A stretch of DNA of 57,028 nt, the filler included, from Platydemus manokwari (taxonomy: Eukaryota): NCBI GenBank assembly GCA_037951405.1. It is 4 parts of 4 records of this genome, joined end to end, with 100 filler letters (N's around TTAATTAATTAA, not from the genome) between each part and the next. Parts side by side here need not be neighbours in the genome. Positions count along the whole stretch, not along the records: positions 1 to 20,588 come from JBBMOY011522522.1; 3 more parts are not named here. One strand, 5' to 3'. A program made the position numbers and the translations under genes. This document shows, one piece after another, positions 4,781 through 20,187 of the stretch. The notes beneath the pieces are model-generated. The model searched no databases and had not been told where the DNA came from. It saw only the letters and a list, made by a program, of their open reading frames with translations. Each line of letters begins with the position of its first letter. The stretch's first letter is position 1.

Positions 4781-6513
4781 AGTCATATTTGTAAATCAGT
4801 GTTAATCAATGAATGTAACAACAAGTTGTGAAAGCTTAGATTTAGAACTAGCTCTCAACTACCACTTGTAATAATTTTCCCTATATTTACCTTTATACTA
4901 ATTGCAGAAACTAAGAAGAACCAAACAGACCCAGTGACCGACACTCAATATATTAATTGTCGAAATTATTCTCAATGTCAATCAACGCTGGTTTAATGGA
5001 TCAAAATGTATTCAGCTCACATTTGCCATTGGTTGGTATGTCATTTGATTTATCATCACACAGATAAATGATTAGAATATAATCAAATAAATCTATTCCT
5101 GACTAAAATACAAGAAACAAATAATAAATAAATAATTCTGTGTATAATGTATTTAGTTTAAATGATTATAAATAGCAATAGGCTGTCTTTTTTATGTTGG
5201 TTATAAAGCAAAAATAATCGAAGTTATTAATAAAATAGATCAGAAATAATTGGATGAATTAATAATCAAAATAAAATTTCGATTTTTCATGATTATTTAT
5301 CATGCATAATTCTATCTGCATAGCAATATTATGGGAAACTATGGATTTTAAAATTTAAGGACAAATCAGCGTAGCAACACGCTAAATAACGATAGGAATT
5401 CACAAATGAACATAAAATCAATCATAACTCCAAAAACCAAAAAAACTATAAAAGAGCAAAAAACATAAGATAGTACTAATAATTTTCTAAGTGGTAATCC
5501 ATGTAAATTATCGTGAATTTGTCAATGTTACGAAATGAATTTTACATTATACAAAGAATCATATATTCTATTTCGATTTTAGTTGAATTTCAAGCTCATT
5601 GTGGTAAATTATTTATGTTTCATTGTCGTATAATTTGTAACAATTTCCTGCAGATTAGTTACAAATTTCTAAATCATTTTCCCACAAAAACCAATGGGAA
5701 TTTGTTGGAATCAAAAATCACACCCATTGCTTTACATCGAAATAGATTTTTATTTATCTTGAGGTCAGAACACAACTTGCTTTTAAAATATAATATTACA
5801 CATTTATTAATTTTTAATATAGGAATATATATATTTAGATGTTTAGATATCCATTCAATATTTAAGAATTAATTAATAGTCTAGTGAAAGCGAAAAACAT
5901 ACTTCAAATATGCTTTAATCGATTTTATTTTTTTTAATTTTACATAATTTTAACAGAAAATTATTAATAACTTTAAAAAAATTGTGCTATGGTTTGTTTA
6001 ACTACTTTCAACCATCTTAATAAATTAAAGAGAGAAATATTTTGAAATGAAATACTAGTTCAGTTCACAGAGAACTTTGTTCAAGTCGTAAATATGCAAA
6101 TTCCATTTATTAATTTCGACTTAGAATCGAAAATGCATTAATATTGGATAATAAATGTTCCACTCAAAGGACAAAAGAATTTGCAAAAACAATTTATTTA
6201 TCAAACAATGGTGATAGAAAGATTGAGTGCTGATTGATTCAGAGTAAATTTATGTTTCTGATCGACCCATGTACCACATAATGTGGCTGAAGTTTCCATA
6301 TTTGTTGTTTTGTTTAACTGATAAAATATATTAAAGTCAAACTATTCGATCCACAATCGAAGAATAAACCGCAAATCCGAGACTACTGAGAGTTTCATAG
6401 ATACATGAATTTTGAATTTCAAGCCATTATAAAAATGATGAGAATAAAAGAATTGAATATTCGCCAATAGGCTGAATTAACCAGGAAAAAGAAATGAATA
6501 ACGTTTAACATAC

Positions 6514-7465: not shown

Positions 7466-9609
7466 TTAGTAATATCTCGATTGAGGATCTAAACAACAAA
7501 CTATTAAAAACCATGAGTTATAATCGGGTAAGCTTACAAAAACTGTCCCGATCACTAAAACCCCTGCCAGGTGCTGGCATTCCACGACTCATTTCTCTAT
7601 CCCTTCTATCGTATTCAATACTTAATGATTTGTTGTAAAATTCATCCCTCTAATTATATGAATTTGATAATCGTTTTCATTGATTAAGTGAAATATATAC
7701 CATTGGTATCATTGACAAAAATACGGAATGATTTCCCAGCCTATCTCTGTTCTTTGACATTGCATTATATGCTTCATCTTCATTTGCAAATTCAGCGTCG
7801 ACTTCACCTTCCGATGCACCACTCTATTTGTGTAGAGATGAATATTCAAACATAATAAATTGCCAATCATTTTTCTTTTCGTACCATAAATTTCATTATT
7901 ATATTCAATGGAACGAGTGGTCTGAAAAATCGAAAAACATCGTCCGGTCGTGTATTCACTGACACCCCTTTCATATTAATAATCACCGGATTACGACTAT
8001 AAAACCGCTGTGAATCTGGATATGGAACACCATCATCCATCGAACGTGGACCTCTAGACAGTGGTGGGGATTTGTCAAATCTTTTCATGTGCATTTCTAA
8101 TAAATCAACCAAATTTCATTTGTGTTCGAAAAACAAAGTCTAATGCACCAATTTACCATTAAATTCCATTTGTCGACGAATTTCATTATTTGCCTCCTCG
8201 ATATTGCTATCAAATACTTCAATGTACCTAATTATAATATCGGGTTTAATACCAATATATTCATAAACAAAATATAACAAAATATAATAAATGCTGTCCT
8301 ATCCTTCAATACAGTTAATTTTTTTATATATATTTTTTAATCCTTTACTCGTCCTGTGCTACTAAACCTATCACTCAAAATCCATCACTTAACTAATAAC
8401 CTAATATTTTTTTTCATTATTCTTTTTAAATCCTATGATTTTTTTTTAAATTTTGATAAAGTTATCCATTCCCATTCAAACCTGTGAGCAATTTTATTCC
8501 CATTCCGTTCCTTGGCAAGTTTTGCATCATGGTATGTTGCAAACTGAACAAAAGCATCTCCTAGCGCCTTTCCATTATGATCAACGAGAATACTCATTCC
8601 GTCCGGCAAAATTTTCAGTCCTAAACGTTTACCAAATAATATTAACAAATCTACACACAATTAACTAATTTCCGAAAATCGTCCAAATTAATGAAACAAA
8701 AATAAAAAGTAAAAAAAAATAAGATACGAAATTCTTGTTTTTTTTTTGAAATCTGAAGACTTTCACAACCAATACATTAATTTGTTTTTGATCCACTTGT
8801 TCCAACCCCATCTTCAGATGTTTTCGATTTTTGAATGCCATTCTTGATTCATAAAATACCATTTTCCATTCCAATATTTCTTAATTCGAATTATTTGTTC
8901 CGAATGATGTTAAAAATATTCTTTCCAAATAATAATTCCACATTCTCAACCCAATCCAGCAAATCCGTATAACGATATAAACCAATACCGTTAAAGTCTT
9001 TATCAAAATTCCAGTCGAGTGTTAATATTGGTAATGAAAAGAAGCAAAAATCTCCAGCTCCTGATTTCTTAAACTAAATAATACCTTGGAAGAATTCTTT
9101 AATATCTGTTTTTGATGCATTATAGGGTAATCCTTTAAGCCGTAAGACATAGTTCTCATTCATTCTTTCATGAACTGGACTCCTCGAACGTTCACGCCTG
9201 GGACGATCTCGTCCGTTTTCATTGAGATTAATCTGTTGATCTTTACACGCCTTAATCATATCAGATTTTGTTGATGTGAATACTTAAAACATAATGTGAA
9301 GATCTTTTAGAAACACTTAAATAAATACCCTCTATATATCTACGACCCATATGTTGATTATGTCTATCTTTAGCTTTGTTCAGATCCTCTTCTGTTTCCA
9401 ATTCTATAAAAGCTTCACCCCACTCTATATTTCGCTGACTTATAGGAAAATGAATCCCTCTTTTACTTCCCTTAATATTAATTCCTGGATAACATAAATA
9501 AACACATGCAGGTAGCTTAATCCAAAAGTTTACCAGGTAAAAATTCAATTATATCATCCATTGTAGTGCGATAAGGCATTCCTCTCAATTTTACCCAGTA
9601 TTCAGACAT
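7466..9609 (-). CDS. hnRNP F/H (GRSF1/glorund-like) family RNA-binding protein with three quasi-RRMs, ~369 aa, 9 exons
   Basis: Exons 9609-9534, 9484-9329, 9282-9085, 8620-8482, 8227-8157, 8096-7885, 7823-7701, 7649-7538, 7488-7466; all GT-AG and phase-consistent. qRRM motifs VKLRGMPY..GEAFIE..MGRRYIEVF and LRLKGLPY..GDAFVQF..IAHRYIEVF, plus a divergent third domain. The last exon is less certain. Confidence 0.92.
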
Positions 9610-12600: not shown

Positions 12601-13343
12601 TAATCATAATTATGTTTTATTACATGAAGGTTATTAAAAAAATTTCATTGAGATCTGAATTCTTATTAACATTAATGATTTAAAACACATAAACTATTAG
12701 CTGCTAGGAATCAACTATTCGATAGGAATTACTCAACACATATCTACTTAGCATCCTACTAGCATTATACCAAACAATCGATAGTTGATACATAATAATA
12801 AACCCACCAGCTAAATACCCATCTATACCATTTTGAACATGAATAACTCAATCATGAAGACATTATCGATCTGTCATGTGAAACACGAAGCCCATACCTT
12901 AGTCAGTGTTAATTTACTGAGATCAGATATTATTTATCATTTATCGAATGAACCTTGATTAAAAAAATAAATAAATTCATATTTCAATGTACAACTAAAT
13001 TATCTATCAACTGTATCAATATATATATTTTTTATCAGTTCTACGTGTGATTGTACAAACACAGATCTACATTGAGACCAACATAATTAATGAAATAAAA
13101 AACCAAAAATAAAAAAATAAATTAAAACATTATATTTCAGTTTAAAACACTTTGTTTTACAGAAAACTTGTTTCAATTCACTACAATTCAACAAATCAGT
13201 GGATATATTTTTCATATATTTTTCAATATTCAAGAATTAAATACATGGTTAATGGGAAACATAGGCATGTACATGAATATTCAAAGGAAAATCTGTCACA
13301 CATCAACATAATACATACAGTAAATGGATCGATATGTGAGATA

Positions 13344-13370
13344 TATGTATGTATGTATGTATGTATGTAT
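13344..13370. repeat. (TATG)n microsatellite just downstream of the UAP1 stop
   Basis: About 6.75 perfect TATG units. Confidence 0.9.
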
Positions 13371-13517
13371 ATAGGTCGAAATAAAATCACCGCTACTATC
13401 ACAGAAGATACCCAATGTCAATAATAATAATATTATTATTCTGATTATTATTACTATTTAATTCAAATAATTGAAAGCTCAAAAGAAACATTTGCTAACA
13501 CAGGCTGTCTTGGATTT

Positions 13518-16500
13518 TCACTCATCATCAATTTTGCTTTCCAAGTGCAAAATCGATCTTTCCGCAGATTTCGTGACAAGATGGGAAACATTTTCCAAAT
13601 CCTTTTTGATGGAAAGAAATGATAATTAAAAATCACAGTTTTGATGGAAACGTCAAACTCACTTCTCCACTGTACGATACCAGTGGTGATATTTCGAAAA
13701 CCATTCCTTTGACTTTATCCCTGAGATTAGAATCATGGACATGTTCAAGGACGAGTTGATTGTGATATTGGAATATATCATCCCTTGCTGTTTCGGGACA
13801 ATCTGATCGACTACCGGGTGAATTTTTTATCGGCGAAAATTCGCGATTTCTTTCTACTTCCCAAATGGCAAACGTACTGAAATTGTAGGCAGAGATTATC
13901 ATCGATTGAGTGGTTTTCAACATTATTATTCAATATCAGAATATTTTCCAATTTTATTTTAGTTTATTTTGCTTTACTATTTAACTCCAATAATAATAAT
14001 TTCCTCTAAAAATTATTCAGTGTAATTACCAAGGTTACTGCACAATATCCATGACAACCAAACAATTACAAAATTATTTATGTCTAGGCCATTCAGAAAA
14101 TCAAGCAGTTTATGTAAAAACATTTAACGAAATTCGAATATTAATTTATTATTATTTGTTAAAATGGTAACAATAGTAATTTGGATTACATTTATCAAAT
14201 ATAAACATACTTGGCCAATGGAAATACATCGAAGACAAATCGTTCCATTTTGATACCATTCTCCTTCTCCGGTTTTTCAAATAATCCCGTTTTAAGATTG
14301 ATAAAAGGCACTTTTTTAATTGCAATATGTTGAACTATCAAATCAGTGATATCGATTTGACAAATTCGCTCGAGAAATTCAGTACTGAACAGATGCATAC
14401 AGATATTGCCACAACGATATTTCAATTTGTTTTCATCATTTTCATCGAGCATTGTTGCGGTTTCAGTTGAGATTTCACTGTATTCTACGACCTAGATAAT
14501 AGGAAAATGTTGTATGAATTGTGTGGAAATAGATGGAAAATTAGTTGGATGAATTATTTTGAAATAAATATTTCATATCAAGAGGAAAACGCTTTTATTT
14601 TTTTTACATCAACACTCTACTTAATACCTTCAAAAGTTAAAATTAGTTTTTGCGTGATATCTGATAGATTAAAATGTTTCTAAATAATAATGAAATGTTT
14701 GTTTTAATATTTGGGATAGACCGCATAATAATATCTATTCAAGGTGAAATACTAAACCGATGTTTTATTGATTACAAAAATAAATTAAAAATTATCAAAA
14801 AAACTAGAATATAGTTAAGTAATAAATTAAGAAATAATAATAATTCATAAAATATAGAAAATTCTTAAAGATTATTCTTAAATAATAAAATCAGGAAGAA
14901 ATATCAATATATAAGTTCCAGATATCTTTAATGAAGAATTAACGAAAATAATAATCTACTTGGAAATGTCCGTTGACTTTACCAACTATTCCAACTGCTT
15001 CCTTCGGTTGGATTTTCTCAACGACTTTTGCAGCACATTCAGCACCTTGTTCCACAGCGAATCCAAGAAATACTGGATCGGCTACTTTTACCAGTATGTT
15101 GTCAACACCATACACCATAGCATACTTAATATTGCGAGCCTTCATATCATCAATCAATTTGTAATTGTGTAAAGCTCTATACAAGCCACCATTTCCATCT
15201 AAAACGGAAAATCATCGAGTTTGGAAATCATCGACGTTATATTTTAGATTTATAATAAATTATATAATAAATTGCTTTTATCAACATTTTATAACAACTC
15301 GTGATAATAAATAATTAATAGGATTACAATTTTTCATTTTGATCTCGAAAACCATCTCTCTGATCTTTGTCGCACAGTGAAATTTTTTTCAAAATAAAAT
15401 AAACAAAATCCAAATATAAACATGTGGATATCAAATATTTATTCAACACTTTAGGCAGATCATTAACGATGTTGATATTTCGGGTTTGATAATTTTATAA
15501 ACATTTACAAAAAAATATATAGTTTCGAAATGTACTTCAATAATGATCGACAATTTAAAGTATCGAATAATATTTCAATATCAATAACAGTGTTCTTCAA
15601 AAATTATTGAAAAAAGAATAGATTTAATATTTCACTCTCTTTTAGAGTTTTACAGGATCTTAAAAAAAAATCATAACGGTTCAATATGAGAATTTCAGTA
15701 TTGGTTGAAAACAACAGCTGTCAATGAAATCATTAATCTACAGGCAAATAATCATGCTAGTAAAAGAGAAACATGATCAGAAGATTGATATTAAAATTTG
15801 AAATTGTTCTAATTATGATAGATTGTTTAAGAAGGAAATTAACGCTTACAATAAATAATTCGTATTTTAAAAACCAATCATAATCCGATTTCTAGACAAA
15901 TCAGAAAACATGAATTGAAAATAAAATTTATTGATTTTGACAATCCATTAATGAGGTAGTAGTATCTGCAATGAAAGATAAACTTGATTATTGATTCAAA
16001 TATATGCGTGTATGGATTAAAACGAGGTAATCCCCACTATTTGAAAATCAATCTTAAGCAATGAAAAAGTAATTATTTGTCAGATTAGAAAACGCAGGAG
16101 TGTTTTCATTGATTATATTACTTATTGTTTGGCATTAAAATACCAATTCAAATTGATCCTACACAATAAATTAGTAACACACAATGAAATAGTAAATCAT
16201 TTTTACTAATAAAAATTGATTCCTTGATTGAAAAAAGTCTAAGTTGACAGGAAAGTACAAATACAAACCAATTAAACACTCGAAACACTTCAAATTATCC
16301 GTTACATACTCTATATCATACTGATTTACGCTCAATCTCAATGAGTACAAATACGAGATTAGAAATATATAAAAAAAAACTTTTTCTAGATCAAGAACTA
16401 TATTTATATTTCATTTTGACGAGAAACCTTATTTTCAGTATAAATAAACCAGTGAATGTCAAGTGAATGTCACTGATATCATTTGTTATTTACGATTAAC

Positions 16501-19500
16501 AGATAAACAAAGTCCTATCAATGATAGGTCGAGTTTGAACTTTTACATAAATACCATTATTCTCCGACAAGATGACACAGATGGATCGACCTGATATCAA
16601 ATATAGAGAGAGTAGGTAGTAATAAGAAATAAACAAAAAATTCGAAAATTTTTTTTATCCAAATCGACGTGATAAATTCACTAACTGGTTTTGAAAAATC
16701 ATCAAATCATCACTATGTTATTACAATGTTAATATCAAAGCCATCAAATAATTCCGGTGTTAAGGCATTCATTAACCTTAAAATATAATACAATGCTGTA
16801 TTTATAGACTACTTATGTGCCGTGAGGTATATTTAAGGAGCAAGATAATGAAAATGAATGTGTATTTCATTCGATATTGGTATAGATAGATAATAAATCT
16901 ACAATGTTAACAAAACTATTGACGAGAATCGATTAAAATTTTACTGATGGCCATAAGTGAAAATGAGTATTGATGCGAAGTTATATCTATATATAAACAT
17001 TCAGAACTTTAAAATATATGATTAAGATGGTATAAGATAAATTCTAAAAATTACCAGGTGATTTCGACACTCTAAATTTCGATTCGAGAAGTATTTTTCC
17101 ATCGAAACCAACAACGGGTAAAGTACATTGTTCGAAAAATATAATCTGATCATGTTTGAGTCCGAAATAATCGTTTTTTCGGAAAAAATCCATAGTGTCA
17201 TCTCGAGTACAATCGGAAGTCATGACATACCTGAACAAAAATCAAATGGCGTAATATAACATATTTCTTATTCTAAAGAATGTGAAAATCTTTATTATAA
17301 TACTGTGAATTTATGTCCGCAATTAAATATCATTGCAGAAAATAACGATCAAAAATTTTAGTTACAAATCTACATCAACATCATCAATATTTAATGCATC
17401 CAATGATTGCATCGTGTGTGCGATGATATTACACATGCGATTCATTATTTATAATACAGAAAAAATTGACTTGACACCATATTCAATAATATTCTGCAAC
17501 GGCTATAAATGACAGATATGGTCACTAATTTGGTTCTTTAAGATTTGATTATTATTTGTTCACATTATTATTGATTATTATTTTATCATAAGATTGATCA
17601 TATTTTTATGTAATATAAGATGAATAAAATTATTACTAAAAATATCAGCAAATGACGGAATCAAAATAGAAATTAAAATCAAGATATTTCGCTTTTTAGT
17701 TAATTAAAATTGGAGATTTATTTTTCAAGATCATTCCAATTGTTTTGCTCTACAGATTATGCTTGGCAATCTTTGGTCACAAATTGGAGTAGGATTTGCT
17801 TTCCAATAAAACAAACCAATATATTTTTTTTCACCGAAAAATACTATTACTGTCAGTTAGACTGATTTCTGGCAAAATCTACTGGTAAAGTGGTTTTGTT
17901 AAGCATAATTATCACAATGGCACTATATCAAATATCAATAAATAATCGGATTTTTTTGAAAACTTGGAACGAATATTATTATTTTGTTTGATGAGTTAAA
18001 TCGGAGAAAAATAGTTATATATATATATATATAATCATTATTTTATAAATCTGAAAATGATATTAATAGGAATGATAACATAAAATATATGAAAACTGTT
18101 CTAAAATTAATAAGAAATAATGATAAATAATCTGAAATAAAAAGGAATATTTCTAAAAAAATGATATGAAACACCATAAAACAATCATTGAGTTCAACAC
18201 ATCAACTACACACACACATGCGCACACACACATATCGTATATTTCATTGATCATATTCAATGCTGCCATCTGCCAAATAAATCAAATAAATCCAAATATA
18301 GCCAAATTGATAACAGTTGACTCATCAAGTGGTCAATGGGTTTGAAACATGTAATGGCTACTCGAAATGATGTCATTGGATAGATGTTCGAGAAGGGTAA
18401 TTAATGAAGACAAATGCAATCAGTTCAAAATTATATATCAATCAAGTAATAATCAATGGGTTCATACTATTATGAATTTATGATTAATAATAATTTTATC
18501 GATATTGAATATAATAATAATTATTATAATATTTACCACATGATCGGTGCCGTTTTACCAAAACGCCTGAGAGCCAGATATTGCAATCTCAATAACCGTT
18601 CAGCCTGTAATTGAAAGAGAGATTTATCTGATGGCAAACCGACCTTATACATTCCTTTAGGGTATTTGAAACCCAATCTGGTGCCTGCCCCACCTGACAT
18701 TAGAATCGTGCAATACTGACCGTTGGACACATATTCCAAACCTTAATTGAAACAATTGAAAATATTTACGTTATCAATAAAAAAATCGTAATAATAATAA
18801 TAATAGCCACATAAATATTATTAATGAAAACAATAATATTAATAAAAATATTATTAATAATAAATCTCTCTTTTGCTATCGAAAAATTATCACAAAATAA
18901 ACAAAAAAAATCAATAAAATTACAAAAAATCAATAAAATTAAAATAAAATCGAAAATCAATAAAATTGAAAAATCAATAAATTATAATAAAGATCAATAA
19001 AATTATAAAAATAAATGTCTACCAATATCATTATATTTATCCAATTGTTCCCGGCTACAATCAGTCCAACTGCCACACTGTTCAGGAGATGGTGGCTCTA
19101 ATTCATTATCAACCATTTTCTTCCTGGTCATTACAGATTTCTGTTTAACATATAATCCACATCATTACATAATAATACAAACAACAATATTGATACAAAT
19201 TATGAAAACAAAACCCCACAAACACTGAACTAAAAATAACGTTTCCAACCTCTAAAATTATATTCTACTATAAATATCCAAACGCTAATTTCGACTTTAA
19301 TCATTATAATTAAATAATAATAAATATTCGTTAAGATTACAAATGGCTTAAGAGCAAAGATCGAGGGAACTTTTAATGAGCAAATCAGCTGTTTTAAACC
19401 ATAAAAAGTATAGACGATTTTCGAATTTATGTTTATTGAGCTTATTGTGGGTATTGTATATCAAAATATCATAGGGACCAACTTATTATAATTATCCTCA

Positions 19501-20187
19501 CATTCATATATTACCTCGTTTAAAATATTTAAAATATGACGGAATAATTATATATAACTGATTATATATAATTAATTATATATAATTAATTATATATAAT
19601 TAATTATATTTAATTAATTATAAATAATTATAAATAAGTAAATATATAAACATAAACAAGTATTTTTTTCCACTTTATAATAATCAAAGATGGCATTTGG
19701 GTTTATTAAGAATAATTTATAACTATTGTCATCAACTATAAGATTAAAGATTGGAAATTTTAGAATATAAATTTTCGATCATTTTGTTTTAAACAAATAA
19801 TTAATAAAAACAAAATAAAATTGAACAGCAAAGTTAAAAAAGTTAAAAGCATGCATAATAATTAGTAACATGCTACAAATATAAGTATGGCTATTTTCTA
19901 ATTTACTAACCTCTTCTGCTTTCTAAAAGAAATATAAACGTTAGTAATAATATTAATATTTTTTTTATCAACTCATATCGATATAAATTGTTTGAAAATT
20001 ATTTTCAAATGTTATGATTGATTACCGTAAGATCATTGAAATATCGGAGAAAATCAATTTCCTCAATGTCTTTCTTCAGAAGTTCTCTTTCCGATTCATT
20101 TAATTCATCCCAAAAGGTTAACAAATGTTGTTGACCGAATTTTTCTAAATGTTGTTGAAGTTCTTGTAATTCGTTGGTAATCGTCAT
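13518..20187 (-). CDS. UAP1: UDP-N-acetylglucosamine pyrophosphorylase, ~496 aa, 9 exons including a 12-nt microexon
   Basis: Exons 20187-20026, 19922-19911 (microexon), 19140-19023, 18741-18537, 17230-17055, 15198-14960, 14491-14211, 13876-13663, 13601-13518; all GT-AG and in phase. Motifs FGQQHLLTFW, GGAGTRLG..PKG, KSLFQLQAER, WYVMTS, FFEQ, SPDGNGG, VDNILVKVADP, VVEYSEI, GNICMH, GIKMERFVFDVF, EFSPIKN, EISPLVSYSGE. Confidence 0.96.
19561..19610. repeat. Tandem array of the palindromic 14-mer AATTATATATAATT (~3.5 copies) in a UAP1 intron
   Basis: Perfect units at 19574-19587 and 19588-19601, with partial units on both sides. Confidence 0.85.
19850..19946 (-). promoter_or_regulatory. Splicing-regulatory elements around the UAP1 microexon
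   Basis: On the transcript strand: branch point TACTAAC (19946-19940), pyrimidine tract plus AG, donor GTTAGT, then GCATG (19873-19869), ACTAAT (19866-19861) and TGCATG (19855-19850). Confidence 0.7.

What the first reader, a model, noticed from the sequence alone, without database searches (positions are those of the whole stretch)
19850..19946. 12-nt frame-preserving microexon (KAEE) in UAP1 with perfect branch point and downstream Rbfox/QKI-type motifs
Seen on the minus strand: TACTAAC-GTTTATATTTCTTTTAG | AAAGCAGAAGAG | GTTAGT (exon 19922-19911). It is phase 0-0 between phase-0 neighbours, so inclusion and skipping both keep the frame. GCATG, ACTAAT and TGCATG cluster within ~60 nt downstream. 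Established: (U)GCAUG is the Rbfox site and ACUAAY the Quaking/STAR site, and downstream placement generally promotes inclusion in neurons and muscle; vertebrate UAP1 has a different, C-terminal alternative insert (AGX1/AGX2). Inference: a tissue-regulated microexon tuning the N-terminal region of a hexosamine-pathway enzyme, likely missed by gene predictors.
Basis: partly seen in the sequence, partly recalled or inferred. Interest (0 to 1): 0.72.

Follow-up and report, generated by a model that had tools for sequence, protein, structure and literature searches.

The report
Candidate 12-base microexon in UAP1
Inside the first intron of a sugar-nucleotide enzyme gene (UAP1) lies a 12-base stretch with splice signals far too good to be chance, so it is probably a real tiny exon adding four amino acids, but no RNA data could be reached to prove that it is used or regulated.

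Summary
On the minus strand, intron 1 of an eight-exon UAP1 gene holds TACTAAC, a pyrimidine tract, TAG | AAAGCAGAAGAG | GTTAGT (exon 19922-19911, phase 0-0, KAEE). GCATG, ACTAAT and TGCATG follow 38-61 nt downstream.

This is more than chance. Its acceptor and donor score as high as the best in the gene. A generalised form of the pattern occurs once in the window against 0.01 expected. Only 5 comparable acceptor-donor pairs occur in 340 kb of this genome. Two GCATG within 70 nt occur in 0.06% of windows.

Use of the exon could not be tested.

Homology does not decide between inclusion and skipping. The skipped form lines up with liver-fluke, Gordionus and another UAP1 at the junction. Inclusion brings the N-terminal spacing closer to the usual value.

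One caveat weakens the count of signals. The branch site (TTACTAAC) and the donor (GTTAGTAA) are exact reverse complements, so they are not independent.

Verdict: probably a real coding microexon (about 0.6). Cassette versus constitutive is open, and Rbfox/QKI control is plausible but untested. It is a new member of a known kind, of modest interest.

The parts
20026..20187 (-). UAP1 exon 1 (ATG at 20187-20185; 54 codons; ends ...FNDLT; donor ACG|GTAATC)
   Evidence: The peptide aligns with the N-termini of solved UAP1/AGX structures.
19923..20025 (-). Intron 1a (103 nt) if the microexon is used
19940..19946 (-). TACTAAC branch-site consensus. The branch A (19941) lies 19 nt before the exon. 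It also contains ACUAAC, a STAR-protein (SF1/QKI) site. TTACTAAC (19947-19940) is the exact reverse complement of the donor GTTAGTAA.
   Evidence: (2 TACTAAC on this strand in 20.5 kb).
19923..19939 (-). Pyrimidine tract and acceptor GTTTATATTTCTTTTAG
   Evidence: 12 of 16 pyrimidines, equal to the best acceptors in the gene.
19911..19922 (-). Candidate 12-nt microexon AAAGCAGAAGAG (K-A-E-E), phase 0-0, 11 of 12 purines
19905..19910 (-). Candidate donor GAG|GTTAGT, 7 of 9 matches to the U1-complementary consensus; +3 is T, unlike the 7 other donors of the gene
19850..19873 (-). Downstream motif cluster: GCATG (19873-19869), ACTAAT (19866-19861), TGCATG (19855-19850). The two GCATG copies can pair as a small hairpin.
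19842..19845 (-). TAAC half-site 15 nt after ACTAAT, giving ACUAAU-N15-UAAC, the two-part form of a Quaking response element
   Evidence: Read. The motif definition is from my own knowledge.
19141..19910 (-). Intron 1b (770 nt) if the microexon is used.
19023..19140 (-). UAP1 exon 2 (KSVMTRKKMVDNELEPPSPEQCGSW...). It has the weakest acceptor in the gene (7 of 16 pyrimidines, no YTRAY).
   Evidence: LEPP...QCGS aligns with homologues.
13518..18741 (-). UAP1 exons 3-8: 18741-18537, 17230-17055, 15198-14960, 14491-14211, 13876-13663, 13601-13518 (TGA stop)

Best explanation
Bases 19922-19911 (minus strand) are a genuine 12-nt, phase-0 coding microexon in intron 1 of UAP1. A 103-nt upstream intron ending in a consensus branch site, a pyrimidine tract and TAG would be recognised efficiently. 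The purine-rich exon (GAAGAG) and a donor that pairs with U1 at 7 of 9 positions would let the spliceosome define the tiny exon. Inclusion inserts Lys-Ala-Glu-Glu after Thr54, in the helical N-terminal domain. That point is about six residues past the position equivalent to human E44, which contacts the catalytic domain. Shown here: the DNA anatomy and its non-randomness. Inferred: that the exon is spliced in at all. Also inferred: that it may be a cassette whose inclusion is raised by Rbfox-type binding to the downstream (U)GCAUG pair, and modulated by STAR proteins at ACUAAC/ACUAAU or by the branch-site/donor stem. If the exon is real, I put cassette at 55% and constitutive at 45%.
For: The sequence is as described. 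The gene is UAP1 with 8 other exons in frame. The candidate's acceptor (12 of 16 pyrimidines) and donor (7 of 9) equal the best of the gene's own sites. It is the only acceptor with a YTRAY branch motif at about -19. The generalised composite occurs once against 0.01 expected in the window. Five comparable pairs occur in 340 kb of the same genome, so about 0.002 are expected in frame in this intron. Of 36 bare AG...GT in-frame candidates in the intron, this is the only one with consensus on both sides. Two GCATG in 70 nt is a 6e-4 event. The region is single-copy, not a repeat, and matches no Rfam family. Inclusion brings the GQ-to-hEP spacing to 54, against a mode of 53 in 125 homologues; skipping gives 50. 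The literature describes microexons with exactly these compensating features: strong sites, short flanking introns, exonic enhancers, and RBFOX motifs in flanking introns of alternative ones (PMC4317164). Hundreds of microexons, 72 of them 15 nt or shorter, are known in a planarian (PMC4978528). A gene with a STAR/Qua1 domain exists in this genome.
Against: There is no RNA evidence of any kind. No close relative was available to test conservation. The skipped form is gaplessly colinear at the junction with Opisthorchis (LTK, 14 residues, PP), Gordionus and P0004. The homologous intron of Opisthorchis has no such exon. The exon is therefore not needed for a canonical protein. The donor has T at +3, which none of the gene's 7 other donors has. 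The branch site and donor are reverse complements, so part of the 'perfect' signal may be one inverted repeat. No Fox-1_C match was found in the genome, which is inconclusive.
Confidence: 0.6

Rival explanations
1. It is a chance pseudo-exon. The signals lie in intron 1 but the spliceosome ignores them, and only the exon 1 to exon 2 junction is made.
For: The skipped protein is complete, in frame and colinear with three homologues at the junction. There is no transcript evidence. The donor has an unusual +3 T. AT-rich introns offer many T-tracts: 36 bare in-frame AG...GT candidates occur in this intron. TACTAAC and GTTAGTA may be a single inverted repeat rather than two signals.
Against: The expected number of equally good in-frame pairs in this intron is about 0.002. 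The generalised pattern is expected 0.01 times in the whole window. In addition there is a 6e-4 GCATG pair just downstream and an exon of 11 of 12 purines.
Confidence: 0.25
2. It is a real microexon but constitutive. It is always included, and the GCATG/ACTAAT motifs are incidental or only help general recognition. Gene models that skip it would then simply be wrong.
For: Both splice sites are at the top of the gene's range. The upstream intron is short (103 nt) and the exon is purine-rich. That is the signature reported for constitutive microexons (PMC4317164). Inclusion gives an N-terminal spacing nearer the family mode.
Against: RBFOX-type motifs are reported for alternative rather than constitutive microexons. 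The skipped form matches flatworm and other homologues without a gap.
Confidence: 0.27
3. It is another intronic element, not a coding exon. Options are a small RNA stem (TTACTAAC paired with GTTAGTAA), a decoy exon that regulates removal of intron 1, or a 16-nt variant using the next donor (GTAAAT at 19906) that shifts the frame to an early stop.
For: An 8-bp perfect stem encloses the acceptor and the exon, and a second small hairpin joins the two GCATG copies. TTA|GTAAAT resembles the real donor of exon 3. By my reading, the 16-nt form runs into TGA in exon 2.
Against: The fold is no more stable than shuffled sequence (z = -0.54). There is no Rfam match. The 12-nt donor pairs with U1 better (7 of 9) than the 16-nt one (5 of 9, by my own count).
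Confidence: 0.1

Closest known systems
Frame-preserving microexons (27 nt or shorter) of bilaterian genes, as catalogued in vertebrates and in the planarian Schmidtea mediterranea (PMC4978528; PMC4317164)
   Same: It is 12 nt, a multiple of three, and has strong flanking splice signals. The upstream intron is short, the exon is purine-rich, and GCAUG motifs lie in the downstream intron. It inserts a few charged residues at the protein surface.
   Different: No transcript evidence exists here, and conservation is untested. The UGC-type element used by SRRM4/eMIC-dependent neural microexons is not seen between the pyrimidine tract and the AG. The host gene is a metabolic enzyme rather than a typical neuronal signalling or trafficking gene.
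Human UAP1 isoforms AGX1 and AGX2 (PDB 1JV1 and 1JVD)
   Same: This is alternative splicing of the same enzyme that adds a short in-frame peptide. A similar 3-residue C-terminal difference separates the Gordionus isoforms X1 and X2.
   Different: The AGX2 insert is 17 residues in the C-terminal domain and affects oligomerisation (PMC7839538). The candidate here adds 4 residues in the N-terminal domain. The two events are unrelated in position.
Rbfox-activated cassette exons ((U)GCAUG downstream) and Quaking/STAR-regulated exons (ACUAAY)
   Same: GCAUG lies at +38 and UGCAUG at +56. ACUAAU-N15-UAAC starts at +45. ACUAAC lies within the branch site.
   Different: Only the motifs are present. Binding, dependence on the factors and motif conservation are untested. 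The Rbfox gene itself was not confirmed in this fragmented assembly.

Membership tests
UAP1/AGX UDP-N-acetylhexosamine pyrophosphorylase (Pfam UDPGP, PF01704) | Match to PF01704 above the curated cut-off | tested here: met
   Exon 5 scores 46-51 bits and exon 3 scores 23.3 bits, against a cut-off of 22.
UAP1/AGX UDP-N-acetylhexosamine pyrophosphorylase (Pfam UDPGP, PF01704) | Closest solved structures are UAP1/AGX rather than UDP-glucose pyrophosphorylase, including the N-terminal arm | tested here: met
   Exon 5 matches 8yp3, 1jv1 and 1jvd with E of 1e-21 to 1e-22. Exon 1 matches the N-termini of the same chains.
UAP1/AGX UDP-N-acetylhexosamine pyrophosphorylase (Pfam UDPGP, PF01704) | Nucleotide-binding loop GGxGTRLG and an intact open reading frame | tested here: met
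   LMSGGAGTRLG is in exon 3. Eight exons with GT-AG borders sum to 1479 nt in frame and end in TGA.
Microexon (27 nt or shorter, spliced into mRNA) | Length 3-27 nt, bounded by AG and GT with usable splice signals, frame kept | tested here: met
Microexon (27 nt or shorter, spliced into mRNA) | Exon-microexon-exon junctions seen in RNA | not testable with these tools
   Only one run, DNA-like, holds the locus. No transcript-derived close relative was found in the protein searches.
Microexon (27 nt or shorter, spliced into mRNA) | Conservation of the exon and its flanks in related species | tested here: inconclusive
   No close relative was reachable. The distant flatworm Opisthorchis has the homologous phase-0 intron one codon downstream but no comparable microexon.
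Alternative cassette exon | Both the included and the skipped mRNA exist | not testable with these tools
   No RNA data. Both protein forms are plausible by spacing: 50 or 54 against a mode of 53.
Rbfox-regulated exon | (U)GCAUG within about 100 nt downstream of the exon | tested here: met
   GCATG lies at +38 and TGCATG at +56. The background frequency of such a pair is 6.4e-4.
Rbfox-regulated exon | An Rbfox gene is present and inclusion depends on it | tested here: inconclusive
   Fox-1_C (PF12414) gave no match, but the controls did not ring either. Dependence cannot be tested here.
Quaking/STAR-regulated exon | An ACUAAY core with a UAAY half-site within 20 nt, and a STAR protein in the genome | tested here: met
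   ACTAAT (19866-19861), then N15, then TAAC (19845-19842), read. STAR_dimer (PF16544) scores 33.7 bits on contig C115100. Functional dependence was not tested.

The most novel reading that the evidence does not exclude
The 12-nt exon is a tissue-switched cassette, Rbfox-activated and gated by STAR proteins or by the branch-site/donor stem. It lengthens by one turn the N-terminal-domain helix next to the contact with the catalytic domain (the equivalent of human E44-R228). Cell types could thereby tune UAP1 activity, and so UDP-GlcNAc supply, by splicing. This would be an N-terminal counterpart, evolved independently, of the vertebrate AGX1/AGX2 switch.
Probability: 0.12. Interest if true: 0.6.

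Novelty: new member of a known kind. Interest (0 to 1): 0.3.

Why it matters
If the exon is used, gene models of this UAP1 that join exon 1 directly to exon 2 miss four residues. Those residues lie in the domain whose position relative to the catalytic core affects activity in the human enzyme (PMC7839538). A regulated version would be a rare case of microexon control of a hexosamine-pathway enzyme. It would also give a compact, testable splicing unit: the branch site, exon, donor and GCAUG pair fit within about 100 nt. If the exon is not used, it is a useful example of how convincing a pseudo-exon can look. Either way the result concerns one gene and does not change how microexons are understood.

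Tried and rejected
Those places were not sent to any search tool afterwards and were masked in later scripts.

2. Close relatives.
- The representative search with exon 6 found nothing closer than about 50% identity at full length. It also found one 172-aa fragment (P0005) that lacks the N-terminus.
- P0005 is not on record in any contig.
- Word searches with exon 1 gave nothing, and with exon 3 gave only 60-76% fragments.
- A word search with an alignment of P0004 plus the eight exon peptides returned 120 proteins, all about 50% identical or less to this gene.
- An exact 23-mer from the end of exon 1 had no hit in metagenome contigs.

3. Paralogues in the same genome. Only tiny contigs carry a UAP1-like exon 5, at about 52% identity. 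One 778-bp contig carries a different exon 1 with another intron position. None is informative.

4. Gordionus isoforms X1 and X2 differ by 3 residues, but in the C-terminal region, not at this junction. The two Opisthorchis felineus isoforms also differ only at the C-terminus.

The local fold is not unusually stable.

6. The hypothesis that homology would demand the four residues was rejected: the junction region varies in length, and both forms fall within the observed range.

7. No joined step. I never searched or folded a spliced (joined) protein or mRNA model. Exons were searched one by one by reference. As a result, neither the junction sequence nor a structure of the two isoforms was examined.

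Full report
**What is there**

Read on the minus strand, the window carries a UAP1 gene.
- Exon 1 runs from the ATG at 20187 to 20026 (…FNDLT, donor ACG|GTAATC).
- Exon 2 starts at 19140 (acceptor …TTAAACAG|AAATCT).
- In the 885-nt intron between them lies ATTACTAAC-GTTTATATTTCTTTTAG | AAAGCAGAAGAG | GTTAGTAAAT.
- Both neighbouring junctions are phase 0, so the four codons (K-A-E-E) can be included or skipped without changing the frame.
- GCATG (19873-19869), ACTAAT (19866-19861) and TGCATG (19855-19850) follow at +38 to +61 from the donor.

**The gene**

Exon peptides match Pfam UDPGP. Their best solved-structure matches are UDP-GlcNAc pyrophosphorylases, including human AGX1 and AGX2. Exon 1 aligns with the N-terminus of the same chains.

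I traced eight exons with GT-AG borders: 20187-20026, 19140-19023, 18741-18537, 17230-17055, 15198-14960, 14491-14211, 13876-13663 and 13601-13518. They sum to 1479 nt, in frame, ending in TGA. The locus is single-copy in the 911-Mb, roughly 2-million-contig assembly; only an AT-rich repeat inside the intron recurs elsewhere. I could not name the organism. The genome is about 27% G+C.

**Is it more than chance?**

Yes, on several counts.
- Among the gene's own sites, the candidate acceptor (12 of 16 pyrimidines before TAG) and donor (7 of 9 matches to the U1-complementary consensus) equal the best. It is the only acceptor with a YTRAY branch motif about 19 nt upstream.
- The intron holds 36 bare in-frame, stop-free AG…GT pairs. 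Only this one has consensus on both sides.
- A deliberately generalised pattern (CTAAC, 8-30 nt, YYYYAG, 3-27 nt, GTWAGT) matches once in the window on both strands. The expectation from 100 shuffles is 0.01.
- I fetched a further 149 kb of the same genome. Pairs at least as good number 5 in 339,848 nt of strand sequence, this one included. The product of the separate site densities predicts 3.1. That gives about 0.008 per 885 nt, and about 0.002 once frame and stop-freeness are required.
- Two or more GCATG within 70 nt occur in 6.4e-4 of windows.
- The 12-mer is 11 of 12 purines, in a stretch that is 20% G+C.

TTACTAAC (19947-19940) is the exact reverse complement of GTTAGTAA (19910-19903). 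The predicted fold pairs them, enclosing the acceptor and the exon. The two GCATG copies also pair with each other. The fold is no more stable than shuffled sequence (z = -0.54), so it is not evidence of a structured RNA. It does mean that the 'perfect branch point' and the donor are not independent observations. If real, the stem could loop the exon out and favour skipping.

**Is it used?**

This could not be tested.
- The only run that holds the locus holds 93% of its words, introns included, and is not on record as RNA.
- No close relative was reachable (searches; P0005 followed up). The representative search found only a 172-aa fragment at roughly 85% identity by eye (P0005), which lacks the N-terminus and is on record in no contig. 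The three word searches and an exact-word scan of metagenomes found nothing closer than about 50% identity.

**What homology says**

The junction region varies in length, and the evidence cuts both ways.
- Favouring skipping as the ancestral form: the skipped form is gaplessly colinear with three homologues at the junction. In the liver fluke Opisthorchis, LTK is followed by 14 residues and then PP, as here. Gordionus has FND, then 16 residues, then EP, as here. P0004 has RYF, then 17 residues, then L-x-P, as here.
- Opisthorchis has the homologous phase-0 intron one codon further on (ELTK|ARGK). The next exon follows directly, and there is no comparable microexon in its intron.
- Favouring inclusion as nearer the usual length: over 125 full-length homologues, the distance from the GQxH motif to the hEP motif has a sharp mode at 53. 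This gene gives 50 when skipped and 54 when included. Its distance from hEP to GGxGTRL is the modal 42.
- Conclusion: both proteins look viable. The exon is not required for a canonical enzyme, and inclusion is not unnatural.

**Mechanism I think most likely (0.6)**

It is a real coding microexon. The 103-nt intron 1a, with its consensus branch site, pyrimidine tract and TAG, is a well-defined short intron. The purine-rich exon and the strong donor compensate for the tiny size. This is what has been described for microexons: stronger sites, shorter flanking introns and more exonic enhancers in constitutive ones, and RBFOX and PTBP1 motifs in the flanks of alternative ones (PMC4317164).

Exon 2's acceptor is the weakest in the gene (7 of 16 pyrimidines), and it is used in either isoform.

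Whether the exon is a cassette or constitutive is open. The strong sites argue for high inclusion. The GCAUG pair, ACUAAU-N15-UAAC, the ACUAAC in the branch site, the possible looping stem and the colinearity of the skipped form argue for regulation. Given that the exon is real, I split this 55:45 in favour of a cassette.

A gene with a STAR/Qua1 domain is present in the genome. The Fox-1_C search was uninformative.

In a planarian, 262 microexons are known, 72 of them 15 nt or shorter. Most are more included in differentiated cells, and many depend on mbnl (PMC4978528). The kind of event is therefore well precedented in invertebrates.

**Likely effect on the protein (inference)**

By the alignment, residue 46 here corresponds to human residue 42. 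The insertion after Thr54 therefore falls about six residues past the equivalent of human E44. [quoted passage not shown] Four helix-favouring charged residues there could shift that domain.

**Comparison with what is known**

This is a candidate new member of a known kind: frame-preserving microexons with Rbfox- and STAR-type flanking motifs. It is unrelated in position to the vertebrate AGX1/AGX2 17-residue C-terminal insert, and to the 3-residue C-terminal difference between the Gordionus isoforms.

**Verdict**

Interest is modest, at 0.3. The result affects one gene, is unverified, and would not surprise a splicing specialist. The decisive test, RT-PCR across exon 1 to exon 2, is simple.

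Noticed in passing
window 19903-19947 (minus strand): TTACTAAC (branch site) and GTTAGTAA (donor) are exact reverse complements 29 nt apart, enclosing the acceptor and the microexon. A second small stem joins the two GCATG copies (19873-19850). The overall fold is not more stable than shuffled sequence.
   Followed up: partly
window ~19540-19640 (intron 1): An AT-rich tandem repeat (TATATAATTAAT-like units) has relatives on dozens of other contigs of the genome.
   Followed up: no
window ~7860-9550 (minus strand): A second gene lies downstream of UAP1 on the same strand. Its ORF pieces carry RRM-like sequence (…GDAFVQFATYHDAKLAKERNGNKIAHRF…, …GEAFIELETEEDLNKAKDRHNQHMGRRYIE…). By eye this looks like an hnRNP F/H or GRSF1-type RNA-binding protein. 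Pfam support is weak (RRM_1, 18.7 bits).
   Followed up: partly
L021 (G000:C278805, 778 bp), 194-322 minus: This is a UAP1-like exon 1 (MDINILRQTWENHGQGHVFQFWDQLGENEQSSLLSCVSQIDLQ|GT…). By eye it has higher G+C than the window, and its intron position is different. It is either a divergent paralogue or DNA of another organism in the assembly.
   Followed up: no
L018 (C1443565) and L019 (C8686), contigs under 350 bp: Two tiny contigs encode a UAP1 exon-5-like peptide at 51-54% identity to the window's gene. They may be a second UAP1-type gene (UAP1L1-like) or foreign DNA.
   Followed up: no
L049 (Opisthorchis viverrini KL596824.1) 2001-2153 and 5513-5665: Exon 1 of the liver-fluke UAP1 is present twice, with identical translation over residues 1-51, 3.5 kb apart in the annotated intron. 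This is a local duplication or an assembly artefact.
   Followed up: no
window 13340-13380 and 18200-18240 (minus strand): There are two microsatellites. One is (CATA)n, just downstream of the UAP1 stop. The other is a GT/GC-rich run (GTGTGTGCGCATGTGTGTGTG) in intron 3.
   Followed up: no
window 19141-19160 (acceptor of exon 2): Exon 2 has by far the weakest acceptor of the gene (7 of 16 pyrimidines, no YTRAY within 50 nt), although it must be used in every isoform. How it is recognised is unexplained.
   Followed up: no
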